This document shows, in pieces, positions 22,320 to 47,530 of a stretch of 64,000 nucleotides of DNA (positions are counted from its first letter, which is position 1; each line of letters starts with the position of its first letter). Both the position numbers and the translations under genes were made by a program. The notes below the pieces were generated by a model. It was not told where the DNA came from, did not search any database, and worked only from the letters and a program-made list of their open reading frames with translations. Source of the stretch: Lytechinus pictus (lineage: Eukaryota); the NCBI RefSeq assembly GCF_037042905.1, contig NC_087258.1, forward strand, positions 16,678,001 to 16,742,000, read 5' to 3'.

Positions 22320-22474
22320 TTAAATCAGTTTTTCCATTTGCTCCACGTATTTCTGTTTTACTATTTGGGCATCAATTAAAACCTGACGGTAATGAGTCCT
22401 CAGCTCCTCAATGTTTAGAGAGCGGTCAAACAATCCGTAGACATAATCTCGCCTCCTTTTTACTTCTGGCAGCG
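22320..22474 (-). CDS. 2OG oxygenase gene terminal exon 11
   Basis: Pyrimidine tract + aag acceptor in phase 1; TLPEVKRRRDYVYGLFD...QMEKLI-stop. Confidence 0.72.
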
Positions 22475-25400
22475 CTTGATACAGAGAGATGGGGGGAAAA
22501 CACATTAAAAAGTTATTTTATTTATTTTTCAATTCATTCATTCATTTATATACTTACCTGTCTATCTAGATTTGTCAATAAACATCACAGGCTAATTAAA
22601 ATAGCATGAATAGTTTCTTTTAATCAACATTTTAGTTGTAGTGAAAACCTTGTGTTTATTATCTAACACAAGACCTTAACCTGAGTGCACTTTCAACTGA
22701 ATGATTAAACATGAGTATATGGTGCACATTTGAAATAGATTTCAAACACTTCCGAAATAGTATTCAGTTTGGGGAATATTTCATCATCCACATGGTTGAG
22801 CAATTAACCCATTGCCAACTGGAACCAGATGATCCGTGTACAAAGCCTATGTGAATCACAGATTTCAGCAGTCAACGGGTTAACATGCAGAATGACATAG
22901 ACTGCATTTATCCACTCTCTTCTTGAATTAAGGTTTCAAAACAGGTTTCAGCGATTTTGTTGCAGATGGTAAATGCAAGTGAGTTTAGATGATGGGGTTT
23001 GGGGAGTTTCTTTGAATCGGGCAAATTTGTGCCATCCAAAAACACGTTTCTGCCAGAGACACGTTTTTGAAGGAGAGATTTACAGAATAAGATAAATTGC
23101 AGCATTGTACCTAATTTTTTAAGTAAAATTATCAAGTAAAATTCTATAGCCACAACTAGAAATATCACCGAAGGCAATTAATACCCCCATCCCATGTCTT
23201 TATCTCAAGACCAATGCTTGTGCCAATTTCACGATCATTGGTCAAAATCTGAGGAAGTAGTTTAATCCGCCATTAATTTTTCTGGGGTTTTGGACATAAT
23301 ATAATGTTACCATTAATGCAACACAATTTCTTACACATATGAAAAATGTGTCTTGCACATCTTTACCACAATACCAATGTGTGTGCCAAATTTTAGGAGA
23401 ATTACATGTAGTTAGAAAATGAAGTAGTTCGATCCACACATTCGCAAGGACTGTCACCTGACCATAAGCTGATTTCCTACACCCCCCATAAAAAATTGTT
23501 TGGTGTCCCACAAAAAAGGAAACCGAGACTCCTAGTGGTAGATTTCAACATAGAAAAACGACTTATGGTCTATCATTTACATAATAATAGAATTCAGCTT
23601 TACCTCTTACTTTGATACCAAATATGATTTGAATGATTCACGCACAGATTATTTAGGAGAGTTTGAAATTTTATGCTAGAACCAGTTGCAGAAAAATGGG
23701 TTGAGATTTGTTTGTTAAGGTTATGACGCCCTTGCGTAAGAAAGGGATGGCTCATTAGCATATCTTTTTGCATTCTTTTTTAAGTTTCTTTCACTCGTCT
23801 CTATTTTTGGAATCACATCTGAGTTTCTGCGCAAAATGTTTCTGACATGCATCAGTTTTGATTATTTTTACTCCACTATGTATGAACAATTCACAAAGTA
23901 TCAAATCACAGAAGTGATATCTAACTCTAAAGACGGGTTTCGTTTTTTTTGTGGGACGCACTATAGTTAAAATAGAAGCAACGTAATGATGTAAGAAAGT
24001 ATACTCACTTTCTTCATCAAACGTTGGTTCTTCATCATATTCCATTTGCTCATCATTGTCATCTTCCTCATAATGGCCATGATCCTCCTCCTCCTCATCA
24101 TCATCGCTGTCACCATCAGGCCTGAAACGTTGGTTCAGTGCTTGGTTTACTGCTCGTAATTCCCTGGCATTTGCAAGGAGCATTTCTTTAAAATGTTCTT
24201 CATAGTGCTTGTCCTGTCAAAGAAGGGGGAAAAAAAAAATGAAAATGAAAGGGATACTCCAGGCTGAAAATAATATAATTTGAACAGATATAGTAAAATC
24301 GGTAAAAAAAAAATGACACTTAAAACATACATGTAATCAAAATCGGACCAGCAATAACAAAGTTATTGTATTTTACAGCTTAGAATTTTAAAGTTTCGCA
24401 ATATATTGTGTAATGATGCAATGAGCAAGCTAATGATGTCATATCATAACACACGCACCGGTGTGTTGGCTCAGTTGGTAGAGCGTCCGCCTCACAACCA
24501 AGAGGTCGGGGGTTCAAACCCAGGCCGCGTCAGACCAAAAGACGTTAAAAGATGGGAATTGCTGCTACCCTGTTTGGCGTTCAACGATTAAAGGGATAGA
24601 GCCTCGTCGATCTGGCACTGCATAGTGGCTGCCGGGCCCTCGATCAATTGGGCAACGCAAATTTTCAGAATATTTCATTTCATGTCTATTTCGAACAATA
24701 AAATATGGATTTTTTTTAAATATAAAATTATATTTTCATATTTCATAGTTCATATTTTGTCCACCAAGAATGAAAAAAATTGATTGACAACTGATTTAAT
24801 GTATGTATGAAAATATGAAATAATTATGATTTCATGTAATAGCATAATGAATGGGAAAGTGGGGACATGACATCATCAGCACAGCTAATGAATATTCATG
24901 ACAGCCTGCATTTAACTGTTTTCACAGAATATTGTCAAACTTTGAAATTCAATAACCTTGTTATTTTTTTTATCAGATTTTGACGATATGTTCAGCATTT
25001 TTCTCAGTGAATTTTACTCCATTTATTCAGATTTAATAACTTTCAGTCCTGAGCAATAAACTCATCTACTCATTACTGAAAAGACTTCTCAACTCATCTG
25101 AACTTATCTACTCTTTTCAACTCCTCATCTACACATTGCTACCAGTGCCCCATTGCATCAAAATGACTATTACAGTAACTTTGCCTTCCAATGGAATCTT
25201 CCATGGAATCCTTGATATTGATTGGCTGTTGAGTATAGTTACCATGGTAGATACCATTGGATGGTAAAGTAACCATAATAGTAAGATTAACGCAACTGGA
25301 GCCGGGACTTCTCATCTTTCATGCAACAAGTGATCTTTCAGAATTCTTTCAATGGACTCTCCCTGCTCTTTCAGTGATCTTTCAATGATCTCTCATGAGT

Positions 25401-28400
25401 CTTACAGTGATCTTTGCAAAAATTTTGAGAGACTGTCGAAAGATCATGGAAAGACTAATTAAGAACGTTGAAAGTTCATTGAAAGACTGCTGAAAGACCA
25501 CCAAAAGACAATTTTCTTGAAAGACCGCTGAAAGACTGTTTTCAACCGTTTCAAAAAGTTTTGGGATTCACAAGGACTACGAAGACTACTGAAAGATCCA
25601 TCAGGAATTGTGAAAGACCATGGAGATCTTTGAAAGTTGATTGAAAGACCTTTGAAATATCAAGCAAGTTTCATGGTCTTACAGCAGTCTTTCAGAGGTC
25701 TTGCTCTCTGTGGAATGGGGGTAGCCTGTTTACAGTCCTTTAATATATCACCATAGATACTTATCACTCCTTTACTTTCTCGCCTTTCAATTTTCATCTC
25801 TATCCCTTCACCATCCTACAGTCCTTTTAGGAACAACCATATGGTTAACATAAGCCTCCTTAATGTTAAGACAAATAAAGTTGAATTTGAACTCACATGA
25901 TAGCTCTTGAAGTGTTGAAGGCACATCTGGTGGCTACCCTCTTCGTAAGCAAACTCTGTCTTCAGTGATTTGACCCTAGCAGCTCTCTCATTGATAGAAA
26001 GCTTAGCAACAAACGTCAACCTACATCAAAATTGGATTAAAATACAAATGGTAACATTCATAACCAAATTCATCTGAAATAAATTGGTATTATCAGTGTA
26101 AAAGTTTTGCAACTATTCATGGCTGAGAATAAGTAATGGTATGTGATTCGTCCAAGACTACAATGGTCCATTGTTGCTGGGTCAGGTGTAGGCAAGGTTC
26201 GAGCCATGTAGGCAGAAAGCTAGAAGCTCTGCGAAGGAAATGACGTGAGTGGTAAGGCTAACAGGATTTCTTTTAGCTCAGAAGTTTATATTTATCTGTC
26301 AGAGCTGTTAGAACCAAGCTACTGCAGGAAGGACCATGCCAAAGCTGCTCTGCAGTCTTTATAGACAATCTAACCTCAAGATGAACTCTCACTCTTGGGT
26401 GAGCCTGCAACACAATGCTGCCATTTGCTGGAACTGGTACTCTGAATGCTCAAGGCCGACTTTGAAGGACAATCTCTTCGGCTCTGAGTGCGAATCAGCT
26501 CAACAATGCACTACCCTGATGACGACAAAGACCGCGATCAGCTGAGTGTGGAATATATGAAAGACAAGAAAGACAGCATCCCATCAACCTATAGATGTAA
26601 ACCGAACCCCAACTAACTGTTATCCTGTATGTATCAGTTGTCATAGCAAATGTGAAACTCCATTACTTGTTATGTTTTTATTTTGAGGGAGAGTAACAAA
26701 CAACAAAAAAGTCATACAAGCTGTTATCTTCATGAAAATGAAACATAATTTGAATGAGAATTTGACCTTCCATAACTTGGACAGGATAAGATTTTTGAAG
26801 GAACGCTCCAAAGACTTACCAAGACTGACCGCGATATTTCACCTATCAGTATCAAAAGGTACCTTACCCCATGATTGGGTCAGTCAAACATCACTTATCT
26901 ACAAAAAGGGAAAATTCACCGCGCCGAAAACTATAGACTAGTCTCGCTTACATGTGCAGTCTCTGAGCTGCTTGAACACATCACTTGTAAGCATTTGATG
27001 GACCACCTAGAGTCAAACAACATTCCTGCATCTCTACACCATGGGTTTAGATCTGGTCAATCAACCGTATCTCAACTCTTCATGACTGTTCATGATCTTG
27101 TATGAGTATGACAAAAGAAGGCAAACTGATGTGGTCATTCTTGATTTTTTAAAGGCCTGTGACAGGGTCCCTTGCAACAAGTTAATGCACAAACTTGCCA
27201 GCTACAGGATTAAAGGTACTCTAAATGCAAAAATTTCTCACCATTAGGGACGGACATCAATCTAAAACAGTATTCGTCACATCCGGCATGCCACAGGGCT
27301 TCATGCTAGGCCCATTGCTCTTCCTATACCATATAAATTACCTTTCAACCTGTGTAAAATCACAAGTACGCTTATATGCAGATGACTGCCAACTTTACAG
27401 GCAGATAAGATTACAGAGAGATCACCAGATACTCTAGGATGACCTCAGCAAACTAGAAACATGAGACATGACATTTAACACAAGTAATTTTAAATTAGGA
27501 CTTCTTAGAAGTTTTTTTTTCAAAGTGGCATGGAGGATGTTCAGTTCATGAGTCTTTCTTACAGCAGGTCCTGCATTTGGTGCTAATCGATTTTTTCTCA
27601 TTCTTTATTTTATTTTTGACACTCTATTTGTGTTCTGTGCTTACCCCCCCCCCCCCAAAAAAAAAGAACCCTCTAGTTTTCTGTGTTTTTTCCCCCTAAA
27701 GGATCCCGTCTACTCTTCAATGGAAGTGACCTCCCTCATGGCACTGGGATGCTGAGTATGTTATACACATAAGGCAGAGCCCCCTGCAAATCAGTTCTGA
27801 CCGCACAGAAATGTTGTTAGTGCTAACAATGCGCGAACAGAAGCCCTGTTACAACCGGTAATGTGGCAGCAATGTCTAATGTTACAACAATGCATTACTT
27901 ATACACATTGCAATAAATGTTTTGACTTCACAATCCGAAATATGTGACTGGGCTTACTGTTAGCGCTCTATTAGGCTGGCACTGTTACTGTGCGGCCGGC
28001 ACATGTTGGTATGCTTAAATCTAGAAATTCAACCATAATGACCTTTATTTTGTAGCAAAAACTTTTTTTCTTGTCAATTTTTTTGTTAAACCAACAAACC
28101 CTCTTCATAAATTGTTTCCAGGGCCCTTCTCTCCGGGTTTCATACATACCTTGAATCTCTGTAGATGGGACTAGGCGGGCGAGCTGAATGAGGAATGATA
28201 CCTTCAAAGATTACAACCCTTCCAAATCTAGGTAGGACACCTACAAGTAAACAGAAAAAAGTGATTGGAAACAACAATATAATAATACTATATTGACAAT
28301 TTAAAGCCGACAGCAAATAACTCTATACAATTACCATGTAAGACACTTTATTATGTAGAGTGTTCCCAGGGGCAGACATGTTGGAGGGCAAACAATAAAC

Positions 28401-31400
28401 ACCTGTGCTTCCATCTGTGATAAATCATTGTTCTATGATTTGATGCACAGGTTTTCCATTTGATGCCTTCAATGTGATATCATCTTAAACTACTCTATAA
28501 GCAATAGTTGATGCTTTATTTGTTTACATATTAATGGCAAGAGTATTGCAGCAATATGGGTTAGTTTACTATATGGGTAATCTGCAGTAATGAGGGTCAG
28601 TCACACAAGGGTATATCACTCACTGATCACTGGTTCGGAGCTGTGGCCATTGAAGTGCAAGAATGTTGTTTCTCCATACTTATCCTCACTCCAGTCATCG
28701 GTGAGGTACACCAGAAATGTCCACTCCTTCTCTCTGATCTCACAGTCCTCGTGGATCCTGGTGTGATCGTAGGTCCTCAGGAGGTTGCAAGAGACATCAT
28801 AGGGATACCACTGGTCGGTACCTGATAAAAGATAGCAAGATCAAAGATTTTAGGTTTAGGAAACATGAAAGACATCTAACTATTCAACAGTACTTGTGGA
28901 TTCTGGATTATTTGAAAGATCTTACAGTCCTTGTGGATCTTGGTGTTGATTGTAGGTTCTCAGCAGATTGCAAGAGACATCATTGGGATATCACTGGTTG
29001 GTACCTGAAAATTTGATGGGTCAAATATTTTATGTCTGGGAAACATGCAAGACAACCACTTGTAATAATGCACCAGTGCTCAGGAATCAAGTATCATTAA
29101 TAAGGTAAAAGAGACATCATAGGGAAACCATTGGTAGGTACCAGATGAAAGATAGTAAGATAAAAGACTTTAGATCTACGAAACATGAAAGGCAACCTCC
29201 TGTCATTTACAGCCCTTGTGGATCTTGGTGTGATCATAGGTTCTTGGCAGAATGCAAGACACACCATAGGGAAAAAATTGGTTGGTACTCAATACTGAAA
29301 AATAATAATAAGACAAAAGATTTTAGATCTAAGAAACATGAAACATCCGCCTATTCTAAGTCTTCATGGATCTTGGATTATAATAATCTAAATCAAAGTC
29401 CTTGTGGATCTTGGTGTGATCATAGGTAATCAGCTGGTTGTGCAAGACATCATAGAGATACCACTGGTTGGTACCTGATACAAGATTGTAAGATAAAAGA
29501 TTTTAGGTCAATGAAATATGAAAGACATCCACCTATTCTAAACTTCTCATGGATCTTGGATTATTAGAAAGATATCACAGTCTCCATAGATGCCATACTG
29601 ATAGGTTGTCAGGAGGTTGCAAGAGACATCGTAGGGAAACCACTGGTTGCTACCTGATAAAAACATGAGTCAAGGAAAAATGAAAGACTCCTGCCTATTC
29701 TACAGTCCTCATGGACCTTGGATTATAATAAAGATTTCACAGTCCTTGTGAATACTGGTATGATCCTAGGTCTTCGGGAGGTTGCAAGAGACATCGTAGG
29801 GAAACCACTGGTTGCTACCTGATAAAAAAATGAGTCAAGGAAAAGTGAAAGACTCCTGCCTATTCTACAGTCCTCATGGACCTTGGATTATAATAAAGAT
29901 TTCACAGTCCTTGTGAATACTGGTATGATCCTAGGTCTTCAGGAGGTTGCAAGAGACATCGTAGAGATGCCACTGGTTGCTATCTGATTTTAAAAAAATG
30001 AGTCAAGGAAACATGAAAGACTCCTGCCTATTCTACGGTCCTCAAGGATTTTGGATTTTTTAAATCTTGCATTATGATAAAGATCTCACAGTCCTCGTGA
30101 ATCCTGGTGTGAGGTTGCAAGAGACACAATAGGGATACCACTGGTTGGTATCTAACGAGAGACTGTAAGAAAAGAGATTTAATGTCTAGGAAACATCAAA
30201 CACATCCACTTATTCCCAATGCAACATTTGCATCCTCTGGCAAGGCATTTATCTACATTTGCCACTCTACACACAGGTGTGGTAAATGGGTACCCGGTAG
30301 GAAGGAATTCCTTCAATGCTCAATGCGCCCAATCAGGGTAGCTGTGCTAAAGCCGGGGTAATAGTATGCAGCGCTTAGATACATTCGTATTAAGCGCTAT
30401 ATAAATTTTGCATATTATTATTATTATCATTATTATTATTCTAAAGACCAGAGAATCAAGCTGATATTATAGCCTGAGAACCAGTGAATTAAAAGCAACA
30501 GATATGGTGGTTCATGCAGAATGCTTGACAAATTATATCAAGGACTCATGAAAACTGCAATTCTTGTAACTTTTAGAAATAATAATAATATTCCGCATTT
30601 ATATAGCGCTTAATACATCAGAACGACGTCTCTAAGACGTTACATTACATTACTTTACAGACATATTATTACCCCGGTCATCGGATCCTTGCATGCCCGC
30701 ATACAATGTATGCACCTTTTCCACTCCCTGGGGAGCATTCCAACAAGAGTTCCAAGACTCAATTGCTAGGCATACTACATATAGGCTTTCACATCCTACC
30801 GGGTACCCATTTAACACCTGGGTGGAGAGTGGCAAAGTGTGGATTAACGCCTTGCCAAAGGACGCTAGGCCATGGTGGGATTCGAACACACGACCCTCTG
30901 ATTACAAGGCGAGAGTCAGAACCGCTACACCACGACGCTTCCACACGGTGGAGACCTCACCTGAAATGAATTCAGCCACCTTCTGTGTAGGTGTCCACAT
31001 CTTGCCTTGGACATAGCTTTCAATAGGAAATCCTGCAATCCATTGGACGTTATCACTGTCAAGATCAAGACTGTCATCGTAGTAGAATGTTCCTGATATG
31101 GGAGGAAAGGTAGAAGGTTTTTTGACTGATAATAATAATTTTAAATAAACATACAAATAATAACGTAAATAGCTACATATATATATAGCACTTAATAATT
31201 TGTGTTTCTAAGAGCTTTATATGCAATTATTATCCACTGCTTAATAACACACCTTATGAAATTAAGGATCGGATCCAAACAAGGGAGCAAGATATGCCAC
31301 ACCCCTTTATTTCAAGAATCACCACAGCAATAAGCTAAATCTAAGAAAATTGTCTTTTTGCGCCCCTAGCTCTATATTACAATTTGCTGTTTGTGCCACC

Positions 31401-37400: not shown

Positions 37401-40400
37401 ACACTATTCAAAAGAGACAGTATACTCACTTGATATTATTCATGTATAAGATTTGTAACAACATGTCCACTGAATATATGAAAAATTTGTTTCATACAAA
37501 AGATACTCCTTTACCCTCTTAGAAATGAAAATAATATATGTTTACCCAGACCTAGAACCAATAGTTGTAAAAGATCTTTCTCTTACCGAGCTGCATCTGA
37601 ATTCAACAGAATCCCTTTGTGCGTGCGTAATGTCATCATTTTCAATTCTTTTAAAAATACATTTTTGAAATATATCTGTGCTAAATGAAATTAAACCACT
37701 GATTTGTACCGGGGGGAGGGGGGTAGGTGTAGGTTATATGATTTTTCTTTGTTTTTAATGATTTCACTTATATGTCTGATGGTCAACTTTCTTTATTTTA
37801 TGGTAATCATAGCATTTTTGTAAGTAAACTGGCTCCATGGAAGACCAGCAGCAATGCATTATTGCAGCTGAATATGGACTACCAGCCGTATAATTTACTT
37901 TATTTTTTTACCTTTTATTATTGTATCTTAATATTGACCTCATCATATCATGTTATATGTATTTGTATGTACTTTGTATCTGTTATTTTATATACGGAAA
38001 TAAAACAAACAAACAAACAAATGACATGCGATCAAATATCTTCCATAACTTTCAATGGAAAGAGGACACATCGAGTAGAGGCCACACAGGAGATATACCC
38101 CATTTGTTCTTTATTCTAGTACTTAAAAATGTCACCACTTTCCTGATTTACATCATATTTTGGTGATATTTTCAGACAGTGACATGCATATTTCATTATT
38201 CTACATTTATTCATATATGGGCTTGTTGTTGGGGATGGTAGCGAACTGTAAGTTCCTTTTTTTTTGGTGCAAAGTATTTTGGGGGGATCATATATTAGCA
38301 CTTCATATGGCAGTGGGTCGTAAAGTCATGCGTTACTTTATGAACAGCATTACAAAGCACTTCTTGTTAAACATAAATAATCCTCTTTGTGTTCAGAGTA
38401 CTACCAATGAATTCAAGTCTTTTCTTTTAAGTTCTCTTTATCACTCTAGCGGGTAAAATGGGCATATTTAAACAACATCATATTATTTACATAAGCTTAG
38501 TTTTTATAGTTTTCACTTCATATTTCACCTTTCTATAATTTGTGTCAGCAATCTGCATCTTCGTAGATGTCATTTATCAAAGTTGTTTTTTTATGGAATT
38601 TTTGTAATGTATATAATCATTAGCGTTTGTCCTATCTTACAGAATGTTATAGTATACAAATAATGAATGTTTATGAGTGCAATGGACACTGGACAGAATA
38701 TTTCACGAGGTTAAAAAAAAAATCAATTCCACGAGGCATAGCAGAGTTGAATGGATCACTTTTACTGAATGAAGTAGTCTGTTCATTGCACGAATGAAAA
38801 AACATTCATTATTTGTTTTATAAGACACCTAAAAAAAAATCCTTTTCATTTTGGATTGAATTTGGTTTGATTTGGAGAAGATTTTGCTATGCAAGCATGG
38901 TCTCTGTTGATTGTCACATACATACTGTAGGTTTCACGGGCCTAATTACAACTGGCAGGCAAAAGATATTCATTCGAGCCAACCCATTCTCAATTTTTAA
39001 ATTTGATATTGCTGATTGACAAAAATGAATGAATATGATTGACAATCTAACACTGGGAGGGAACCTACTGAACTTCCTTTTTTCCAAATTGGAAAGATAT
39101 ATCACTACTTTGGAACTATTTTTTTACTGGCGGAAGAATTAGGGCCATTTTACTCTCTCAAGTGATGAATTCGATCCTGTCAGGTGTAGTCTTCATAAAT
39201 GCCGATTTATTCTTAAAATTAGCCTGTCGAGGTACCCTTTTCTGGTCAGGTATGGAATGTCAGACATATATCCTGTCCACTGGTAGTAAACATTCAACCC
39301 TCGAATTTCCTCCTTATTTTTTAAGAATTTTTTTTTAAGTGCCACTTTAACACACAAATCTATGGGAAATTAATTAGGCATGTGATACCTGCAACACGCT
39401 GCAACACCAGTGTGGTGCAAGTGGTCCTGGTGAGCATGCAATGGAAAAATCGTATGGATCCAAAATTACGTCATTGTACGTCATTGTAGAATGATCGATA
39501 TCAAACTACCCATAAAATGACAAGGATCTATCTAGGTGAGTATATTTTGTGAGAAATTAAAATAAACCAAACTGAAACTCTTACCAACTGAGCTATCCCA
39601 CACCACTGCTCTGTTATACTTGGGACTAAGAGCCACGAAAGTATCGTTGTTATCTTCGTAAAAGAGAAGTTCACCATAATCATTCTTGCGCCAATAGTGA
39701 TTGAAATAAAGCACCACGGAATACTCCTTTTCTTCACCCGTATTATCCCTGGTCAATTTAATGTGGTCACCTCTGAAAAAAAATAGAATGCAAAGACAAA
39801 CAAATTCATGTATTACGTTCAAGACCTTGCTACTCTCATTTCAGTGTTATCGTCAAATGGCTCCATCTTATCTGTCTGAGTAACTTGTAAATATGAACCT
39901 GTTCGATATAGAAGATCATTTTCATAAGGATTTATATAATTGTTAAGGCAAAGTTTTAAAGGAACTCTGGAATAGCGTCCCGCACAATTTAAGGCAAGTT
40001 TATACAATTGCAGTATTCAAATCTGCATATAAAAAGTACTTATTTAAGTGATAATATCATCATAGCATTTCTGGGGAATAAATAGTGATTAACTTTTAAT
40101 AATTTAACAACATATATTGGTTATATCGCTTTACCCCGATACATTAACATAATCATAAACAAATTATGAAATACTCAGTATTTTGTCGATAGGGCCTATA
40201 GCAGAATTTCGACAATGTCGATCGATAATATTGAAATATCAACCAACACCAAACTTGAAGTTGAAACAGCATTTTCCTGGTTTAAGTCACCAGTCCATTC
40301 ACTGTCGTTTATTACGTCAGCACTGGTGACTTCTTTCCATTCCCATTGACTTTGTACACAACGAGTGCACACACACGAGAAAGAGGTGACTAATTTCACG

Positions 40401-42283
40401 ATAAGGCCATTGAAACCACCATTGCAGTGTCAGCTTACCATACCTTCTAAATACATTAATGGAGATGCTGAAGATCTTAAGAGTCGTTCTATCAACGCCC
40501 ATTGTAGATGAGACTAATCCTTTCATGACTGAGATGAAGAGAGAGTTCTCAAATGGTCCAGGATCCAAAGATGCAGACCAAGGACTAGGACCATCTCTGC
40601 TGTTGAACCTGAATGTATGTTCAAAGAATTGTTTTAGTTTTAAAAAAAATGTTAATTTAATAATTTTAATGAATAGAGAAAAATCAAACAAGCATAACAC
40701 TGAAAATTTCATCAAAATTGGATGTAAAATAAGAAAGTTACAACAGTTTAAAGTTTTGCTTATTTTTCACAAAACAGTTATATATGCATAACTCAGAGAC
40801 ATGTAAATGAGAGAGTCGATGATGTCACTCACTATTTCTTTTGTTTTTTATTGTTTGAATTATACAATATTTCAATTTTTGCAGATTTGACAATAAGGAC
40901 CAACTTGACAGAACCATCAAATGTTAAAACAATGGTAAATACCACATGTTCCTGAAGGGAGAAATAAAACTTTGTTTCATCAGACAACAGGGAGAAAATT
41001 TGAATATTTCATAGTTCATATAATAAAATACAAAGAAATAGTGAGTGAGTGATGTCATCACACATCAGTCCCCTCATTTGCATACCGACCAGGAAGTGAA
41101 TATAACTGTTTTGTGAAATTAAGCGAAAATTTGAAATGTCATAACTTTCTTATTTTACATCTGATTAATTGATGAAATTTTCAGCGTTATGCTTGTTGGA
41201 TTTTTCTCCTAATTTTATTAAAGTCAACTTTTGGTTGGGGTGGACTTGTCCTTTAAATGAACCGAAAGTCTGAACTCTATTTACATGTTTCTTGAACAAA
41301 GAATGGCATATAATGTTACTTATGTAAATATAAAAAATCTACTACAACTTTCAATAACACCACAGAACTACATGTAGGGGAGATCGGGGTTAGTTGGAAC
41401 GCGGGGTAAGTTGAAACACTGTAATTTTCTTTAACGCCTATCAAATAAATTTATGCAATACTGCCCTCAATTTATTGCTATTATACAACGGTGTTGTATT
41501 ATTAATAGCAATTAATAAATTGAGGGCAGTATTTATTGCTATTAATAATACAACAGTGTTGTATAATAGCAATAAATTGAGGGCAGTATTGCATAAATTT
41601 ATTTTACAGGCGTTAAAGAAAATTACAATGTTTCAACTTACTCCGCATCCCAACTAACCCCGATCTCCCCTACCTGTGCAAGATGAGGGAGAAATTAGAC
41701 AGGAATAACTGTCTTTTATTATACTAGGGATTTATTCAGCAACTTCTGACATTACTGATATCAAACGTAGGTCGTAGTTTAGCAGAACAGCTGACGGTAC
41801 AGAGACAGATAAGATACATACATGTATATTATATTTCATCCTAACATTTTTAGGATTCTTCTAATTATATGCTTTCACCAAACGCTTGCTGGTTCTACTT
41901 CAAGTTGATCATGAAACAGATTATTTGGTCAGTACGTGTCTCAGTGAAAATATAAATTGGCATACTCACTCCCATTCTGCAACCAAGTTTGAATAATCCT
42001 GCAATGTTGTCATCAACCGAAAATCCAAAACATCGTCAAAAATTTCGACGGGGCGCCCGTCTAAGGTTTGGTAAGATTTCCTATTTCTCCATTCTCGACA
42101 CCCAGACGGTCCTGCTAAATTTTTGATCAAACATGACGACGTCTGATCATCTGAAAGAATGACAGGTTCAAATGTAGGTAGAAATCTTTCTGAGTGTATT
42201 AGTGAGTCCTGCTCAGATAGGCCACATAACATACAAATTACTGCTGTCAAACTTTCCAACATTCTTAGAAGATTTGCCATCAT
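22320..42283 (-). CDS. Tandem 2OG-Fe(II) oxygenase (prolyl-4-hydroxylase-like, 2OG-FeII_Oxy_3-type) domain protein, 11 exons, ~626 aa
   Basis: Exons 42283-41970, 40608-40444, 39772-39585, 33565-33354, 32720-32624, 31092-30961, 28821-28624, 28240-28150, 26020-25897, 24213-24009, 22474-22320. All introns GT-AG with matching phases; total 1881 nt, open. Domain 2: DHTRIHED...TFLVYL...W....GET.F...VLPRFGRVVIFEGIIPHSARPP...RLTF. Domain 1 aligns to it but lacks the metal ligands. Confidence 0.88.
24009..24213 (-). CDS. 2OG oxygenase gene exon 10 (acidic tract)
   Basis: DKHYEEHFKEMLL...DGDSDDDEEEEDHGHYEEDDNDEQMEYDEEPTFDEE; gacag acceptor, GTGAGT donor. Confidence 0.85.
24457..24750 (+). mobile_element. 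tRNA-derived SINE (family B) inserted in a Kolobok-like MITE (~24248-25050)
   Basis: TGGCTCAGTTGGTAGAGCG, GGTTCAAACCC, GTCAGACCAAAAGACGTTAAAAGATGG; (TTTCA)-rich tail; flanks resemble the 50126 MITE family. Confidence 0.82.
25897..26020 (-). CDS. 2OG oxygenase gene exon 9 (RxT 2OG-binding motif)
   Basis: RLTFVAKLSINERAARVKSLK...FKSYH; GTGAGT donor. Confidence 0.85.
26775..27480 (+). mobile_element. Decayed CR1/Jockey-like RT fragment in intron 8 of the 2OG gene
   Basis: Frameshifted pieces: LKE...LPHDW..LIYKKG, AENYRLVSLTC, HHGFRSG.ST, VTSGMPQGFMLGPLLF, RLYADDC. Confidence 0.88.
28150..28240 (-). CDS. 2OG oxygenase gene exon 8 (distal His)
   Basis: SVLPRFGRVVIFEGIIPHSARPPSPIYRDS; ttgtag acceptor, AAG|GTATGT donor. 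Confidence 0.9.
28624..28821 (-). CDS. 2OG oxygenase gene exon 7 (HxD motif)
   Basis: GTDQWYPYDVSCNLLRTYDHTRIHEDCEIREKEWTFLVYLTDDWSEDKYGETTFLHFNGHSSEPVI; 198 nt, phase 1-1. Confidence 0.9.
28830..30215 (-). repeat. Tandem array (~8 units of ~150-190 bp) derived from the acceptor and 5' half of exon 7
   Basis: Recurring (+ strand) CAGTCC..GTGGATC.TGGTGTGAT..TAGG...GGTTGCAAGAGACATC.TAGGGA.ACCACTGGTTG.TACCTGAT, identical in design to 28741-28826. Confidence 0.9.
30225..30440 (+). mobile_element. 5'-truncated SINE (family A-related)
   Basis: CCTCTGGCAAGGCATT...GTAAATGGGTACCCGGTAGGAAGG...AGCGCTATATAAAT + (TAT)n. Confidence 0.8.
30580..30943 (-). mobile_element. tRNA-derived SINE (family A-related), ending ~18 nt from the exon 6 donor
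   Basis: Reverse strand GGAAGCGTCGTGGTGTAGCGG...GTTCGAATCC...CTCTCCACCCAGGTGTTAAATGGGTACCCGG...AGCGCTATATAAAT(TAT)n. Confidence 0.88.
30961..31092 (-). CDS. 2OG oxygenase gene exon 6
   Basis: GTFYYDDSLDLDSDNVQWIAGFPIESYVQGKMWTPTQKVAEFIS; CAG|GTGAG donor; 132 nt, phase 1-1. Confidence 0.87.
31484..31634. mobile_element. Small TIR element; sister copy at 59536-59683
   Basis: CCTCAGTCACATTTGCTCTA ... TAGAGCAAATGTGACTGAGG; colinear with 59536-59683. Confidence 0.8.
31757..32102. mobile_element. piggyBac-like mini-MITE containing a nested Harbinger-like MITE (31807-32066)
   Basis: ttaa|CCCGATGGAGACTG ... CAGTCTCCTATGGG|ttaa; a similar empty-size element lies at 22808-22879. Confidence 0.75.
32624..32720 (-). 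CDS. 2OG oxygenase gene exon 5 (start of domain 2)
   Basis: NYTTSQGKRLYIFDGLFDADDLMKLREFVPKH, paralogous to the exon-1 GRPVEIFDDVLD segment; not in the ORF track. Confidence 0.85.
33354..33565 (-). CDS. 2OG oxygenase gene exon 4
   Basis: GYIMKPPSMDFKQGMMSLKMSF...CLTK; ttcag acceptor, AAG|GTGAGA donor. Confidence 0.85.
33853..34116 (+). pseudogene. LINE ORF1 C-terminal fragment
   Basis: RGIIARFTSYDIRNRIYQSRRIL...IFIQESLTKSR...IWTQDGRIRV: typical L1-like ORF1 RRM/CTD signature found in CR1/L2 elements. Confidence 0.8.
34628..37688 (+). pseudogene. LINE ORF2: PHD finger + AP endonuclease + reverse transcriptase, with two lesions
   Basis: PHD (CVLC...CTTCCKWVHISC...WECTIC) in frame with ORF 34895..37522 across one TAA (34835-34837); APE motifs LNETRL, MGDIN, SDH; RT motifs QSGFRP, DLQKAFD, GVPQGSLLGPLLF, YADDT, KYLGV; +1 frameshift near 37511, after which YPLRNE...LPRPRTNSCKRSFSYR continues to TGA at 37688. 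Confidence 0.92.
39585..39772 (-). CDS. 2OG oxygenase gene exon 3 (degenerate domain 1 core)
   Basis: GDHIKLTRD...YSVVLYFNHYWRKNDYGELLFYE...LSPKYNRAVVWDSSV; tttttcag acceptor, GTAAGA donor. Confidence 0.88.
40444..40608 (-). CDS. 2OG oxygenase gene exon 2
   Basis: cattcag|G TTC AAC...; FNSRDGPSPWSASLDPGPFENSLF...SINVFR; 165 nt, phase 2-2. Confidence 0.8.
40640..41252. mobile_element. Kolobok-like MITE copy with eroded left end
   Basis: Colinear with 11337-12108 minus the 7SL-like insert; ends TGGGGTGGACTTGTCCT|ttaa. Confidence 0.82.
41374..41673. mobile_element. Palindromic MITE in intron 1 of the 2OG gene
   Basis: GTAGGGGAGATCGGGGTTAGTTGG ... CCAACTAACCCCGATCTCCCCTAC; arms >110 bp; internal repeat of AATAAATTGAGGGCAGTATT. 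Confidence 0.82.
41970..42283 (-). CDS. 2OG oxygenase gene exon 1 (possible signal peptide, start of domain 1)
   Basis: MMANLLRMLESLTAVICMLCGLSEQ...GRPVEIFDDVLD...AEW; donor GA|GTGAGT. Confidence 0.8.
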
Positions 42284-43067
42284 GAACTGCAAGCACTTTT
42301 GCTTCTCTTGCCTGACCATGAACTGCCAAATATTAACTTCCTGTGTACTCGGGCGCTAGGCACGGGTAGCTTTCCGCCGCTCTCTAAGCATGCTCTCGCT
42401 CAAAGCTCTCGCTGCATTGATATCTTGCATCCAGCGCGCGCGGGGAATTCCCTTATACCAGTCGATCGATGTTGGGCTAGGGTTAACATGCAACAGGTGG
42501 TAGCCTATATGTTACCAGACGTACGTGTACGTTGGGATGTACGTCGTAAGTGTGGTTGTAGTACTACTAGCCTGGGAGTGGTTGTGCACAGGACAGAAAG
42601 AGAGAAAGGTTCTCGCAGAAGATTGACTGATATCTCAGCATCATTCTTGGCCTGTTCCAGTTGTATAAAAGGTTGATTTGATCATTGTGAAGTCTTCAAC
42701 TGATCTGAGCTGAACGAGCCGATGCTAATGACGTGTCTTTGAATTTTGATGATGAGTGCTATTAATTATGTTTATGTATTGTTATTGTAGGGCATTTCAG
42801 CTGACTTTGTGTCAGATCAGGGCAGGGGTGTTCCCCGTTTTTTCTTTAGTTCTTAAACAGTACTAACAAGTAACAACTGTCTGGTCTGTGATTAGACCAA
42901 AAGCTTCGGTCTCTGTTATGTTGGTTGTTCAGCTGAACTCCGTTGGCTTCACTCACCAAATACAGAGACCGAAGTTCTAGCGCGATCTGTACAGGGGACT
43001 CAATGGCCATATGTTTATGTACTTAAGATCGGATAAAACGGGGAAGTGAATTTGCGCGACAGCCGAG
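42284..43067. promoter_or_regulatory. Putative bidirectional promoter between the 2OG and JmjC genes
   Basis: <800 bp between the minus-strand ATG (42283) and the plus-strand first donor (43067); locally CpG-rich; GGGAATTCCC (42443-42452), TGACGTGT (~42729), GGAAGTG (~43042). Confidence 0.6.
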
Positions 43068-43744: not shown

Positions 43745-44492
43745 ATGATTCTACTTACAGTCCTCCTTCAGCTAATCGCAGTCATCCATGGAGCAGAAGA
43801 TCTTCCCCAGGGTCACCTCCAGCCGTTTGGTCATCATCGACCACCAGACGTGGTCATTGATGAACTCTATGACTTGCCAGACCCACAGACCTTCTGGGAT
43901 GAGTACGTGTCTATCGAGAAAGCTGCAATTTTCCGGGGAGCTGCCACTCGCAGTCCCGGCTTCATCCTGTGGACCGAGGAATATCTAAGCAAAGCCTATG
44001 GAGACGTTGAGGTTCGACTGGAAGGCAAGCGTGAGAGAAAAAGCGGTATCCCCGTTGGAGAGAAAGGTCTGGGTCGGGATACTGTACGCAACTTCCTCCA
44101 GACATTCCGCGAGAAGGACACCTACATTGTCTCACAGCTGCCGGAGCCAATGTACCAAGACTTCTATATCCCACCGAGCATCTCCTGCGGGAACATGCGT
44201 AACCGCATCATCGAGATCGACCTATGGATGAGTTCCGGAAACACACATAGTATCATCCACAAAGATGCATTCAACGCCATAAACTGCTTGATGAAGGGCA
44301 CCAAGTATTGGAAGCTCATTGAGTTCAAGTATGAGAAGTGGCTCTACAAGACGTGGGAACCAAAGAGAGAGCTTGGAGGCAACTCACAGGTTGATGCCCA
44401 CAGCATTGATCTTCTGAAGTATCCTGACATTGCCAAAGTCAGGTGGTCCAACATCACTATCAATGCAGGAGACTGCTTGTTCTTACCTAAAT
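43745..44492 (+). CDS. JmjC gene coding exon 1 (signal peptide + most of the JmjC domain)
   Basis: Within ORF 43589..44533; true start at Met53; HKD at 44258-44266. Confidence 0.92.
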
Positions 44493-47400
44493 GTAATTAC
44501 TTTTACATCTTTTTTCTTGTTATGCCTTGTTGAGTCAATATTATCATGGTATAATTCCTATTTATGTTTAAAGGTTGGGCTAGGTTATGATAAATCTTAT
44601 TCTTTTTTGTTCGGGTTGAATCAAGTATTCTGTATTTTTGATGGCGCATGTAGCAAGATAAATTTTCCAGAGGTACACATGTTTATGCCTGCAAGGGATA
44701 AAATGATCCATTTGCTGTAGCAATCATTTATTAATACATTTCAAAGAAAAACATTCTACCAGGTGGAATATGCAAGAGAGCGACATCTTTCATTTATATT
44801 TTCAGAATCAGAGGTTAGGTTTTTTTCTCAAACAGTTTCCTAATGAGTTGTAATATATATCGTGAACCTTCTACCCGTGGTGCAAGCAGTGTGTAATTCA
44901 CTGATAAGTATTAGCTATGGTTATGACAAGAAGGAGAGGCTTTAGGATAACTGGCATAAAACCAAATGAATTTGGTGTCATATTAACTACCGGTAAATGA
45001 AATGAAAACATGCCTGCGAGACATCAGTTAATATCTATTCCTTGAAACACAGAGCGCATATCAGCTGCTCTGCTAATATCATGTTGAGTTTTTGTAGAGC
45101 ACTAAAGAGAATCTTGAAAAATTGATAATTTTCTTAATGAATTATCAAAATTTCCATTCAGTTATATTTTCTTGAAAGAGTGTGAGATAGTAGAAAGCTT
45201 TGAGCACCAAAATCAATACCCTATTTTTAGCCAGGGTAATGTAGGAGTGCCTTGATCACCCAACAATGTCAGTGGATGTGTGCTATGTAAATACTGTATT
45301 TTCATAAGAAATTGTTATTCTTTTGTTGTCTAATTCATCCAGCGTATTATCATCAGGTGTCATCGACGGGCGACCCCAATATGGCCGTCTCTGTACTCTT
45401 TTCTAGGCTTACCCAGTTTGACGATACAGGATGTGACCAGACTCCTATTGGTTTTACTCCATTGAGTGAGGTTGATGTTCTCTGGAGCTGGCCGGGACAT
45501 GGAATCATGAGTATGGGTAATTTGGATGTCTGGATGTTAAAGTAAGTTTTCATTTTAAAAGTTTAATCTGTTAAGAAAAAAATTCTTTCCACGTTGTTAT
45601 ATAAATATGTGCCTTAATACTAGTGCATTTAACACTAGCTCGATGGAAAAATATATAGGCTTAAATCAAATGGTGTTGTTTTTTATTTTCATTTCATCTG
45701 TATAATGAAAATCTCCATTCATAGATATTTTCCTTCAAAGAATAACAGATCATTGTAAAAAAGTTAATTATTGCTAATTTCAGTACATGTCAGAAAGTTG
45801 GAATAATGTATAAAATCATACATAATTATTACCATCATATCATGTTTCTGTGTTTTTTTTGTGTGTGTAGAGCCAATTACATGGAGTTTGCCGAGGAGTA
45901 TGGTGAAATGACTGAAGAGGTTATGAGAAATGATGTAATGACAACTTTCCCAGAACTAGAGGAGGAAGAAGTCAGGAGAACTGTGCATGAGGTATGTCTA
46001 ATATACATATTCAAAATATTGTAGGCCTTAATTGTTTCCTGAAAGCTCAGAGATGCCACTTTTCTGCCTATAGTTTGAACTTTACATCTGGTATACTATG
46101 TGCATTCCCTTTCTCTGTTTTATAACTTTGCCTGACTTGTTTTGAGGATGTTTTTAACAAGAGATATATTTACAGTACAATTAATTGATAACATCTCATT
46201 CATAGACCTACTTTTAATGGGATTGCCCCCCCCCCTTCCATCCAGTGCTTATATGTATGTTGGCACAAAAGGATGACTTTTTGTGAAATTAAACTGTGAA
46301 ACACTCCATGTCATGAGTCATGCATAACTCACCAATAGCTTTACGAAACATTCCCCTGGATGGAGAGTGGCAAATGTAAGTCTGTACCTGTCATATTCTC
46401 CTTCCTATCTCACCTCTTTCAGGCATGGAATGTTATCGACAAGTCGGGCAAGGGTTTCTTGACGACAGACGATATCGATGATCTTGACGTTGATACATGG
46501 AGAGAACATTGCATACGTATGACGGGACACGATCCTTCTAATACAGAGGAGTTTGAATTCTACTACATTGATGTTGGATTTATTGAGTAAGTTCATTTAG
46601 GCCTCGGTTCAGTACATGAAATTGTGCTGGCCATCTTCGAAGCTTTTCACTTAGTCTGTTGTCATTAAATTTACCTTCCTTGAAATCTTGATTCAGACAA
46701 ATACTGCAATTTCTACCATTTGTTTTCAAGCGGAATATTATCAATGTTATTATAATTATTTGTTTCTCTAGTGGCACAAATCAATTAAATAAAAAATAAA
46801 ATTGTGTAGTAATACATGCAGCTGGATTAGACAATAGTTTTGATGGGCCGACTATTATATGACCCCTGGAACGGTATTGGGACTAGATCCGCCAATTAAT
46901 ACATCTACCTAATGTTCTCAAACGATGTCTTATGTCAAAAGCATTATTGTTTCCATGATTTATCTTTCCATGATTTAGGGAGCTTTTGGATGGGCTAATG
47001 GATACTTACCCAGAGAAGATTACAAGGTCCATGTTTGTCAAGAAATACATTGGTGCTCTCGGAGGGACAGAAAAATATGCAGATGATGTAAGTCAAAACC
47101 TCCCATCTCATTTCCCTGAAAAATAGGGTTGGGTTTGCCCACAAATTTCAATTTCCAAAGGAGAGTGTAAAGGCCCTGTCACGTCGTTCCATGCAAGCCT
47201 CGCGGCAATCACCTGCAACTCGCCCGTTTTGAAGGCATAGTGCTTAATATCGACCGTTCCCTCTTTTTTTTAGACACCCTGTAAACCGTTGGGACAGTTA
47301 TAACAACTATAATCCTTCTACATATTTCCTTTGGTTTGTTTTTAATATTTTCACAGATATTTGATGGGCTAGCTGGAGAATCGAGTGCTTCAGCCACCCC

Positions 47401-47530
47401 TGAACAGGTCAGAGCCAATATGGACATGGCGTTGAAGAAATGGAAAGAGAATGCCCCTATTGATTCAACTCCAGAGATTGATGACTCCTTTGAAATGAGT
47501 GATGTTCATTTGTTAAAAGAAGAACTCTAA
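43745..47530 (+). CDS. ER-luminal JmjC (cupin_8; FIH/JMJD5/JMJD7/TYW5-like hydroxylase fold) protein with EF-hand-like region and KEEL, 6 coding exons, ~504 aa
   Basis: Exons 43745-44492, 45343-45541, 45871-45991, 46423-46586, 46979-47087, 47357-47530 (GT-AG, phases match, 1515 nt). Signal peptide MILLTVLLQLIAVIHG; IHKD...N.NC..KGTK.W; GDCLFLPKSYYHQV; loop DKSGKGFLTTDD; ends KEEL*. Upstream non-coding exon with donor GAG|GTAAGT at 43067/43068 and acceptor at 43712. Confidence 0.92.
45343..45541 (+). CDS. JmjC gene coding exon 2 (distal His, YYHQV)
   Basis: catccag acceptor, AA|GTAAGT donor. Confidence 0.9.
45871..45991 (+). CDS. JmjC gene coding exon 3
   Basis: ANYMEFAEEYGEMTEEVM...TVHE; GAG|GTATGT donor. 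Confidence 0.85.
46423..46586 (+). CDS. JmjC gene coding exon 4 (EF-hand-like loop)
   Basis: AWNVIDKSGKGFLTTDDIDDL...; ctttcag acceptor, GTAAGT donor. Confidence 0.88.
46979..47087 (+). CDS. JmjC gene coding exon 5
   Basis: ELLDGLMDTYPEKITRSMFVKKYIGALGGTEKYADD; tttag acceptor, GTAAGT donor; not in the ORF track. Confidence 0.85.
47357..47530 (+). CDS. JmjC gene terminal exon (KEEL)
   Basis: IFDGLAGE...DVHLLKEEL-stop; tcacag acceptor. Confidence 0.88.
   Translation: MFDGLAGESSASATPEQVRANMDMALKKWKENAPIDSTPEIDDSFEMSDVHLLKEEL

What the first reader, a model, noticed from the sequence alone, without database searches (positions are those of the whole stretch)
22320..47530. Head-to-head pair of unrelated 2OG/Fe(II) dioxygenases, both apparently secretory-pathway: candidate ER hydroxylation module
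Seen: two genes diverge from <800 bp. One encodes a tandem P4H-like protein (dead + live domain, hydrophobic N-terminus). The other encodes signal peptide-JmjC-EF-hand-like-KEEL. Established: both folds are double-stranded beta-helix enzymes using Fe(II), 2OG and O2; KDEL-like ends give ER retrieval; bidirectional promoters often co-regulate partners. Inference: a co-expressed luminal hydroxylase pair or complex acting on secreted/ECM or biomineral proteins or a metabolite. The KEEL-bearing protein might retain the partner, which has no retrieval signal, as PDI does for the collagen P4H alpha subunit. I do not recognise either gene as a named vertebrate gene.
Basis: partly seen in the sequence, partly recalled or inferred. 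Interest (0 to 1): 0.85.

Follow-up and report, generated by a model that had tools for sequence, protein, structure and literature searches.

The report
Head-to-head ER hydroxylase gene pair
In the sea urchin Lytechinus pictus, two uncharacterised oxygen-dependent hydroxylase genes, both built for the secretory pathway, are transcribed in opposite directions from one shared promoter region; a similar pairing in a sea anemone hints that they may work together, but this is unproven.

Summary
The window is Lytechinus pictus. On the minus strand, 11 GT-AG exons (42319..22320) translate exactly to LOC129276552. This 638-aa protein has a signal-peptide-like N-terminus and two 2OG-Fe(II) domains. 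The first domain lacks the distal iron-binding His. The second keeps H/D/H/R in all 42 relatives.

On the plus strand, 6 exons (43745..47530) encode a 504-aa protein: signal peptide, JMJD5-like JmjC domain, degenerate EF-hand-like helical domain, and C-terminal KEEL. All five introns are confirmed by RNA reads. A KDEL-type ending is kept in 33 of 33 relatives.

Stranded RNA-seq shows the 5' ends of the two transcripts abut or overlap. Neither family has any literature, and no vertebrate or protostome member was found.

Linkage varies between lineages:
- S. purpuratus: neighbours, but in tandem orientation.
- Nematostella: the P4H-like orthologue sits head-to-head (1,068 bp) with a secreted JmjC paralogue.
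- Diadema, Amphiura, Patiria, Ptychodera, Dendronephthya: not adjacent.

A secretory location for both proteins is well supported by sequence. Co-regulation is plausible. A physical complex, or retention of one protein by the other, is untested.

The scan's notes s1-329304 and s1-329316 already describe the two genes on this same window.

The parts
22320..42319 (-). Whole coding span of the tandem 2OG-oxygenase gene (L. pictus LOC129276552, 638 aa, 11 coding exons)
   Evidence: The spliced translation equals P0129 exactly. tblastn of the S. purpuratus orthologue maps the same exons.
41970..42319 (-). P4H-like exon 1: start codon(s), signal-peptide-like hydrophobic segment, start of domain 1
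   Evidence: RNA depth is on the minus-strand RNA orientation. A hydrophobic N-terminus is present in 40 of 42 relatives.
40444..40608 (-). P4H-like exon 2 (domain 1)
39585..39772 (-). P4H-like exon 3: domain 1 core, with LTRD in place of HxD (iron-binding His lost)
   Evidence: Pfam 2OG-FeII_Oxy_4/3.
33354..33565 (-). P4H-like exon 4: end of domain 1 (Tyr in place of the distal His, Lys in place of Arg), conserved N-x-T sequon, inter-domain helix
32624..32720 (-). P4H-like exon 5: start of domain 2
30961..31092 (-). P4H-like exon 6 (DSDNVQWIAGF motif)
28624..28821 (-). P4H-like exon 7: domain 2 HxD (H405, D407), flanked by two conserved Cys (393, 408)
28150..28240 (-). P4H-like exon 8: domain 2 distal His465 and Arg478
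25897..26020 (-). P4H-like exon 9 (helical region after domain 2)
24009..24213 (-). P4H-like exon 10: helix plus acidic low-complexity stretch (modelled with pLDDT below 50)
22320..22474 (-). P4H-like exon 11: C-terminal helix ending in two hydrophobic residues (..EKLI), then the stop; no KDEL-type signal
42173..42700 (.). Shared bidirectional promoter and 5'-overlap zone. The P4H-like 5' UTR reaches at least 42644. The JmjC non-coding exon ends at 42669; an alternative one ends at 42173.
   Evidence: RNA joints 42669/42670->43711 and 42173->43713; contig pieces 41968-42644; depth on both read orientations
43745..44492 (+). JmjC exon 1 (coding part; acceptor at about 43711): signal peptide, GHLQPFGHHRPP motif, Cupin_8 core with H173-x-D175 and K188
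45343..45541 (+). JmjC exon 2: distal His254 (YYHQV), end of the JmjC barrel
45871..45991 (+). JmjC exon 3: start of the C-terminal helical domain
46423..46586 (+). JmjC exon 4: EF-hand-like loop DKSGKGFLTTDD (Lys at ligand position 5)
   Evidence: Pfam EF-hand_6/7 at E about 0.02, below the cut-off. Relatives score higher.
46979..47087 (+). JmjC exon 5
47357..47530 (+). JmjC exon 6: C-terminal KEEL followed by the stop

Best explanation
The locus holds two intact, expressed genes for 2-oxoglutarate/Fe(II) oxygenases that both enter the secretory pathway.

Gene A (plus strand) encodes a soluble ER-resident protein. It has a JMJD5-like JmjC domain with a complete H-x-D...H/Lys active site, a helical domain derived from an EF-hand pair, and a KDEL-type retrieval signal (KEEL). 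It most likely hydroxylates a side chain (Arg, Lys or similar) on proteins passing through the ER.

Gene B (minus strand) encodes a secretory protein with two double-stranded beta-helix domains, as in OGFOD1/Tpa1, but in reversed order: the N-terminal domain has lost its iron site and the C-terminal domain is catalytic. It is most likely a prolyl-type hydroxylase of secretory or matrix clients.

In L. pictus the two genes are transcribed divergently from one promoter region, with abutting or overlapping 5' ends, so they are probably co-regulated. The pairing looks like a lineage-variable remnant of an old linkage.

Shown: gene structures, active-site conservation, folds, transcription, overlap of the 5' ends, and the synteny pattern.

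Inferred: ER location, hydroxylase activity, co-regulation, and any shared pathway. On present evidence the enzymes need not form a physical complex.
For: Gene models and transcription.

JmjC protein:
- Cupin_8 at 79.7-101 bits.
- H210/D212/H291/K225 and four Cys are invariant in 33 sequences; E541/L542 are nearly invariant.
- All 33 C-termini are KDEL-type: KEEL, REEL, RDEL, KDEL, HEEL, HTEL, HDEF and others.
- The AF2 model has pLDDT 87.4. Its best structural matches are JMJD5 (TM 0.82-0.85 normalised by target), then JMJD7, TYW5 and FIH.
- Alignment to JMJD5 places K225 on the 2OG-binding Lys.

P4H-like protein:
- Two Pfam 2OG-FeII_Oxy stretches.
- H405/D407/H465/R478 are invariant in 42 of 42. 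The domain 1 position matching the distal His is Tyr in 32 of 42.
- The AF2 model has pLDDT 84.9. Its best matches over both domains are Tpa1, OGFOD1, Ofd1 and Sudestada1, at E 1e-12 to 1e-10.
- Signal-like N-termini occur in nearly all relatives. There is a conserved N-x-T sequon and a Cys pair around the HxD.
- Coral paralogues end in KDEL.

Bidirectional transcription: read orientation is opposite for the two genes. Joints 42669->43711 and 42173->43713 are seen, and a contig reaches 42644.

Linkage elsewhere:
- S. purpuratus: the genes are 5 kb apart on one strand.
- Nematostella: the orthologue is head-to-head, 1,068 bp ATG to ATG, with a signal-peptide-bearing JmjC paralogue.
Against: - No SignalP or localisation data. 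The signal-peptide call rests on hydrophobicity and conservation only.
- The long-form P4H-like proteins have no retrieval signal, so they may be secreted rather than ER-resident.
- The EF-hand loop is degenerate in urchins.
- Only two stranded RNA runs were laid, so co-expression is not demonstrated.
- The head-to-head orientation is not kept in S. purpuratus.
- Adjacency is absent in Diadema, Amphiura, Patiria, Ptychodera (13 Mb apart) and Dendronephthya.
- The Nematostella neighbour is a paralogue. It scores only modestly closer to this family (100-116 bits) than to JMJD5 (87 bits).
Confidence: 0.5

Rival explanations
1. Obligate two-enzyme module. The KEEL-bearing JmjC protein binds the KDEL-less tandem-domain hydroxylase and keeps it in the ER, as PDI does for collagen P4H alpha. 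The two enzymes then modify the same clients.
For: - The 5' ends are head-to-head and overlapping.
- Adjacency recurs in S. purpuratus and, with a paralogue, in Nematostella.
- Both families were found in the same phyla (echinoderms, hemichordates, amphioxus, tunicates, cnidarians), and neither was found in vertebrates or protostomes.
- Long-form P4H-like proteins never carry KDEL, whereas coral paralogues do.
- Domain 1 is a dead domain that could serve as a docking surface.
Against: - There is no interaction evidence of any kind, and no multimer prediction was possible.
- The genes are unlinked or far apart in five of the genomes examined.
- Sponge and Trichoplax have the P4H-like gene, but no JmjC-EF-KDEL hit was seen from them. 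That search was not exhaustive.
- Many gene families show this same phyletic pattern.
Confidence: 0.17
2. Neutral neighbourhood. The two genes are functionally unrelated. Their adjacency in camarodont urchins is an accident of local rearrangement, and the Nematostella pairing with a different JmjC gene is coincidence or inertia of an old linkage group.
For: - Orientation differs between Lytechinus and Strongylocentrotus, in contiguous sequence without gaps.
- There is no adjacency in Diadema (different scaffolds), Amphiura, Patiria, Ptychodera or Dendronephthya.
- The Nematostella neighbour is not the orthologue.
Against: - For one gene's immediate divergent neighbour to be a secreted JMJD5-like gene in two phyla is improbable by chance. 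It is roughly 1 in 10,000 per genome for a family of a few members, by my estimate, which was not computed.
- The 5' ends overlap and both genes are expressed in the same samples.
- Same-chromosome or same-scaffold placement in Ptychodera, Patiria (a paralogue) and Dendronephthya fits an ancestral linkage.
Confidence: 0.28
3. The tandem-domain protein is not luminal. Its hydrophobic N-terminus is a signal anchor or a mitochondrial or other targeting sequence, or the protein is cytosolic like OGFOD1.
For: - The closest folds (OGFOD1, Tpa1) are nucleo-cytoplasmic enzymes.
- The L. pictus model starts 12 residues upstream, giving a long charged n-region.
- One 19-residue window just reaches a transmembrane-like score.
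Against: - The hydrophobic core is short (about 11-15 residues) and is followed by polar residues in nearly all 42 relatives.
- There is a conserved sequon and a Cys pair.
- Coral paralogues end in KDEL, which only makes sense in the lumen.
Confidence: 0.05

Closest known systems
JMJD5 / KDM8 (JmjC arginyl C-3 hydroxylase)
   Same: It is the best sequence and structure match for the JmjC domain: phmmer E 3e-13, about 24% identity, TM 0.82-0.85 normalised by target. It has the same H-x-D...H triad and the same 2OG-binding Lys.
   Different: JMJD5 is nuclear/cytosolic with an N-terminal ARM-like domain (this part is from knowledge). The protein here has a signal peptide, four invariant Cys, a C-terminal EF-hand-derived helical domain and a KDEL-type end.
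JMJD8 (ER-luminal JmjC-only protein)
   Same: It is the precedent for a JmjC protein in the ER lumen, targeted by an N-terminal signal sequence (PMC5684140).
   Different: It is not the closest relative. No JMJD8 appears among the sequence hits or the top 30 Swiss-Prot structural neighbours. The word KDEL does not occur in the JMJD8 paper, and no EF-hand-like domain was seen there.
OGFOD1 / Tpa1 / Ofd1 / Sudestada1 (ribosomal prolyl hydroxylases with tandem DSBH domains)
   Same: These are the only solved or reviewed proteins that align over both domains, at E 1e-12 to 1e-10. PF13661 matches. One domain is active and one is metal-free. There is an RLS/T motif after the distal His.
   Different: In OGFOD1 the N-terminal domain is catalytic and the C-terminal one lacks metal (PMC4396695); here the order is reversed. 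Global TM is only 0.22-0.30, so the domain packing differs. The protein here also has a signal peptide, a sequon and an acidic tail plus a C-terminal helical hairpin. There is no Ofd1_CTDD Pfam hit.
Collagen prolyl 4-hydroxylase alpha2-beta2 (P4HA with PDI)
   Same: An ER-luminal 2OG prolyl hydroxylase whose catalytic subunit lacks a retrieval signal and is retained by a KDEL-bearing partner (from knowledge). PF13640 matches domain 2.
   Different: There is no P4Ha_N or peptide-substrate-binding domain. The proposed partner is itself an oxygenase, not a PDI. No interaction has been shown.
P3H1/leprecan and P4H-TM (ER 2OG oxygenases)
   Same: P3H1 is an ER prolyl 3-hydroxylase and appears among the fold hits for single domains. 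From knowledge, not checked here: P3H1 carries its own KDEL, and P4H-TM combines an EF-hand domain with a 2OG oxygenase domain in the ER lumen.
   Different: The domain architectures differ. These hits cover only one DSBH domain, at E about 1e-6.

Membership tests
JmjC / Cupin_8 2OG oxygenases (JMJD5-like hydroxylase branch) | Cupin_8/JmjC profile match above the curated cut-off | tested here: met
   79.7 bits for exon 1 alone and 101.4 bits for the L. variegatus orthologue, against a cut-off of 27.4
JmjC / Cupin_8 2OG oxygenases (JMJD5-like hydroxylase branch) | H-x-D/E...H iron triad and a 2OG C5-carboxylate-binding Lys | tested here: met
   H210, D212, H291 and K225 (P0001 numbering; 173/175/254/188 in the window protein) are invariant in 33 sequences and align to the JMJD5 ligands
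JmjC / Cupin_8 2OG oxygenases (JMJD5-like hydroxylase branch) | JmjC double-stranded beta-helix fold | tested here: met
   AF2 pLDDT 87.4; TM 0.82-0.85 (normalised by target) to JMJD5 structures
JmjC / Cupin_8 2OG oxygenases (JMJD5-like hydroxylase branch) | 2OG-dependent hydroxylase activity | not testable with these tools
   Needs an enzyme assay
JMJD8 orthologue | JMJD8 is the nearest named relative | tested here: not met
   No JMJD8 among 55 sequence hits or the top 30 Swiss-Prot fold hits. JMJD5, JMJD7, TYW5, HSPBAP1 and FIH rank there instead.
Soluble ER residents retrieved by the KDEL receptor | C-terminal [KRHQSA]-[DENQ]-E-L-type tetrapeptide | tested here: met
   KEEL in the window. 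All 33 relatives end in a KDEL-type variant, and E and L are nearly invariant.
Soluble ER residents retrieved by the KDEL receptor | Cleavable N-terminal signal peptide and no other membrane span | tested here: inconclusive
   A short hydrophobic core follows Met1 in nearly all relatives, and there is no internal 19-residue hydrophobic window. No SignalP was available.
OGFOD1/Tpa1-type tandem-DSBH prolyl hydroxylases | Two DSBH domains in one chain, one with and one without a metal site | tested here: met
   Two Pfam stretches. Domain 2 H/D/H/R is invariant and domain 1 lacks the distal His. The top fold hits span both domains.
OGFOD1/Tpa1-type tandem-DSBH prolyl hydroxylases | Catalytic N-terminal domain with a metal-free C-terminal domain (Ofd1_CTDD) | tested here: not met
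   The order is reversed here (against PMC4396695). No Ofd1_CTDD hit. Global TM is 0.22-0.30.
OGFOD1/Tpa1-type tandem-DSBH prolyl hydroxylases | Nucleo-cytoplasmic enzyme acting on ribosomal protein uS12 | not testable with these tools
   The sequence argues for the secretory pathway instead. The substrate is unknown.
Collagen-type P4H alpha subunit | N-terminal assembly domain and peptide-substrate-binding domain, followed by a C-terminal PF13640 catalytic domain | tested here: not met
   Only 2OG-FeII_Oxy_3/4 are found; there is no P4Ha_N
Bidirectional (head-to-head) gene pair | Opposite-strand transcription starts less than about 1 kb apart | tested here: met
   Stranded reads: the P4H-like transcript reaches at least 42644. 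The JmjC first exon ends at 42669 or 42173.
Bidirectional (head-to-head) gene pair | Arrangement conserved in related genomes | tested here: inconclusive
   Tandem in S. purpuratus. Head-to-head with a paralogue in Nematostella. Absent in five other genomes.
Bidirectional (head-to-head) gene pair | Correlated expression | tested here: inconclusive
   Both genes are covered in both stranded runs, but with only two runs this is no correlation test

The most novel reading that the evidence does not exclude
This would be an ancient luminal two-enzyme hydroxylation module that predates the cnidarian-bilaterian split. A KDEL-bearing JMJD5-like JmjC hydroxylase and a secretory, reversed OGFOD1-like tandem-DSBH prolyl hydroxylase would be born head-to-head, co-regulated and physically associated, with the JmjC protein retaining its partner. 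They would act on the same secreted or matrix clients, and would have been lost together in vertebrates and protostomes.
Probability: 0.17. Interest if true: 0.8.

Novelty: new variant of a known kind. Interest (0 to 1): 0.55.

Why it matters
Known ER protein hydroxylation rests on a small set of enzymes: collagen P4H, P3H, PLOD, ASPH, P4H-TM and, without a known activity, JMJD8.

This locus points to two further conserved and completely unstudied luminal 2OG-oxygenase families in cnidarians and invertebrate deuterostomes.
- One is a JMJD5-like enzyme with an unmistakable KDEL-type signal. This would bring JmjC Arg/Lys-type hydroxylation chemistry into the ER.
- The other is an OGFOD1-like tandem-domain enzyme with the active and dead domains swapped.

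Their recurrent physical linkage gives a concrete, testable hypothesis of a shared pathway. Sea urchin and Nematostella embryos are tractable systems for testing it. No vertebrate member was found in these searches, which would fit with the families never having been noticed.

Tried and rejected
- ESM Atlas look-up of P4H-like exon 1 alone gave only noise. Atlas look-up of the full P4H-like protein gave only generic single-domain 2OG clusters.
- Exact-protein locus look-ups failed for P0056, P0045 and P0001, because only the longest isoform is on record. The L. variegatus arrangement and the position of the Patiria JmjC paralogue could therefore not be read.
- blastn of the S. purpuratus locus against the window aligned exons only. 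The inversion breakpoints and promoter homology could not be traced.
- The homologue search with the Nematostella neighbour returned only anonymous metagenome or Logan proteins, which were no use for synteny.
- Four literature searches returned nothing. They used accession and LOC numbers, JmjC+KDEL+EF-hand, and JmjC+Nematostella+Branchiostoma+signal peptide.
- I considered that the JmjC gene is a JMJD8 orthologue and rejected it.
- I considered that the S. purpuratus tandem orientation is a scaffolding error. It is unlikely, because the locus has no N runs.
- The identity line printed (37/505) is an artefact of comparing without alignment. tblastn gives about 92-95% identity to L. variegatus.
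- The spliced JmjC protein of the window has no reference id. Its L. variegatus orthologue P0001 was used for searches and folding instead.
Full report
**Identity of the window.** A spliced alignment of the minus strand reproduces protein P0129, Lytechinus pictus LOC129276552 (638 aa), residue for residue. It uses 11 exons with GT-AG borders, so the window is L. pictus. The plus-strand gene is about 92-95% identical to L. variegatus LOC121427477 (P0001).

**Gene A, plus strand (43745-47530).**
- Six coding exons give an open 504-aa frame ending in KEEL.
- All five coding introns appear as GT..AG joints in two stranded RNA-seq runs and in assembled contigs of two further runs.
- Exon 1 matches Pfam Cupin_8 at 79.7 bits against a cut-off of 27.4.
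- The family was recovered from sea urchins, a brittle star, a sea cucumber, a sea star (a more distant paralogue), acorn worms, three amphioxus species, ascidians and many cnidarians. Members are 500-548 aa.
- In an alignment of 33 members, H210, D212, H291 and K225 are invariant, as are four cysteines. The last two residues, E and L, are nearly invariant.
- Every C-terminus is a KDEL-type variant (KEEL, REEL, RDEL, KDEL, HEEL, HTEL, VDEL, HDEF and others). Nearly every N-terminus has a short hydrophobic core directly after the start.
- The closest solved structures by sequence are JMJD5, at E 3e-13. That alignment puts K225 on the 2OG-binding Lys of JMJD5.
- An AlphaFold2 model (pLDDT 87.4) matches JMJD5 at TM 0.82-0.85 normalised by target. 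JMJD7, TYW5 and FIH follow.
- JMJD8, the only JmjC protein reported in the ER lumen (PMC5684140), is not among the top 30 reviewed-protein matches. This is therefore a separate branch.
- Residues about 350-516 form a confident all-helical domain. Its EF-hand loop is weak in urchins (E 0.02, with Lys at a ligand position), below the cut-off in amphioxus, and above it only in the Patiria paralogue. 'EF-hand-like' is the right wording.

**Gene B, minus strand (42319-22320).**
- The exhaustive profile-free search with the domain 1 exon found only 67 proteins. Most are about 600-670 aa and match in two stretches.
- Named members come from echinoderms, hemichordates, amphioxus, ascidians, cnidarians, a sponge, Trichoplax and, more distantly, ctenophores. 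All are 'uncharacterized'.
- Pfam finds two 2OG-FeII_Oxy_3/4 domains.
- In 42 aligned sequences, domain 2 keeps H405, D407, H465 and R478 without exception.
- In domain 1, the position matching the distal His is Tyr in 32 of 42. The first His survives in only 16 of 42, and urchins have LTRD there. The 'dead plus live' description is correct.
- The AlphaFold2 model is confident (pLDDT 84.9, pTM 0.81).
- The only proteins that align across both domains are Tpa1, OGFOD1, Ofd1 and Sudestada1, at E 1e-12 to 1e-10. Global TM is low (0.22-0.30), so the domains pack differently.
- In OGFOD1 the N-terminal domain is catalytic and the C-terminal domain has no metal site (PMC4396695). Here the order is reversed.

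**Evidence that gene B's product enters the secretory pathway.**
- A short hydrophobic N-terminal core is present in nearly all relatives.
- An N-x-T/S sequon after domain 1 is conserved in the deuterostome long forms.
- A conserved Cys pair brackets the HxD motif.
- Most tellingly, about 546-aa coral paralogues end in KDEL.
- The long-form orthologues never carry such a signal. They end in an acidic stretch, a helical hairpin and two hydrophobic residues.

**The junction between the genes.** The start codons are 1.4 kb apart, but the transcripts meet.
- Reads of the orientation that marks minus-strand RNA cover P4H-like exon 1 and continue to at least 42644.
- Reads of the opposite orientation join a non-coding JmjC exon ending at 42669 to the acceptor at 43711.
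- A minor JmjC form joins 42173, which lies inside coding exon 1 of the other gene, to 43713.
- This is a true bidirectional arrangement with partly overlapping 5' ends. Those joints also prove that the head-to-head layout is not an assembly error.
- Both genes are covered in both stranded runs. Two runs cannot show correlation.

**Is the pairing conserved?**
- S. purpuratus: the two genes are neighbours but on the same strand. The P4H-like stop lies about 5 kb upstream of the JmjC start, in sequence without gaps.
- Diadema: the genes lie on different scaffolds.
- Amphiura: no P4H-like gene lies within 10 kb of the JmjC gene.
- Patiria: no JmjC gene lies within 10 kb of the P4H-like gene.
- Ptychodera: both are on one chromosome, 13 Mb apart.
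- Dendronephthya (soft coral): they share a 3.5-Mb scaffold but are not within 10 kb.
- B. lanceolatum and Oculina: contig lengths place them on different chromosomes.
- Nematostella: the P4H-like orthologue is head-to-head, 1,068 bp ATG to ATG, with a Cupin_8/JmjC gene whose first exon encodes a signal-peptide-like segment.

The Nematostella neighbour is not the orthologue of gene A. It is 30% identical (BLASTP E 6e-32) and shares the N-terminal 'KPxGxHRP' motif. It scores 100-116 bits against the family, compared with 87 bits against JMJD5. It is therefore a related secreted JMJD5-like paralogue.

My reading is that an old linkage between the P4H-like gene and a secreted JmjC gene has been kept in some lineages and broken in most. 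Chance is unlikely to explain two phyla. However, the evidence falls short of a constrained, universally conserved pair.

**Verdict.** The secretory/ER reading of both proteins is well supported by sequence conservation, and co-regulation in L. pictus is plausible. A shared pathway is an attractive hypothesis with mixed synteny support. The complex or retention idea is untested. Four searches found no paper on either family. I rate this a new variant of known kinds (JmjC hydroxylases and OGFOD1-like tandem-DSBH hydroxylases) with moderate-to-good interest.

Noticed in passing
window 28937-30149 (minus strand); also L003 15343-16444: The intron upstream of P4H-like exon 7 holds about 8 decayed tandem copies of the 5' half of that exon (SGT.QW.PYDVSCNL...HT.IH.DC), with stops and substitutions. 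S. purpuratus has 2-3 such copies at the same place, so the array predates the split of the two urchins.
   Followed up: partly
window 34895-37522 (+): An intact 875-aa ORF of a non-LTR retrotransposon (Exo_endo_phos plus RVT_1, E 9e-44) lies in intron 3 of the P4H-like gene, antisense to it. More reverse-transcriptase fragments lie at about 26730-27440 (+).
   Followed up: partly
window 42893-43337: A roughly 445-bp multi-copy element sits inside the JmjC 5' intron. It has very high RNA depth on both strands, many variant letters, and loose ends running into unrelated sequence on both sides. The reads therefore come from many genomic copies.
   Followed up: no
window 42173-42283: A minor JmjC transcript form uses a first exon that ends at 42173. 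This exon overlaps coding exon 1 of the P4H-like gene in antisense (6 reads in X20 and 1 read in X19).
   Followed up: partly
L010 1-888 (-) and 10001-21046 (+): Branchiostoma floridae carries two copies of the JmjC-EF-KDEL gene head-to-head, about 9 kb apart, each called as 524 aa.
   Followed up: no
P0156, P0160, P0161, P0162, P0165 (coral proteins): A roughly 546-aa paralogous branch of the tandem-domain family in scleractinian corals ends in canonical KDEL. The long-form orthologues in all phyla end instead in two hydrophobic residues (LI, LF, WF, IL, LL).
   Followed up: partly
window 6376-6702, 12786-13116, 24380-24591, 30650-31016: Several copies of a short interspersed repeat recur in both orientations. 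Their translations share strings such as WLGFEPTTLC and IRTHDPL..RRESEPL. One copy lies next to P4H-like exon 6.
   Followed up: no
window 16278-16474: A run of 197 N (assembly gap or masked stretch); left as is.
   Followed up: no
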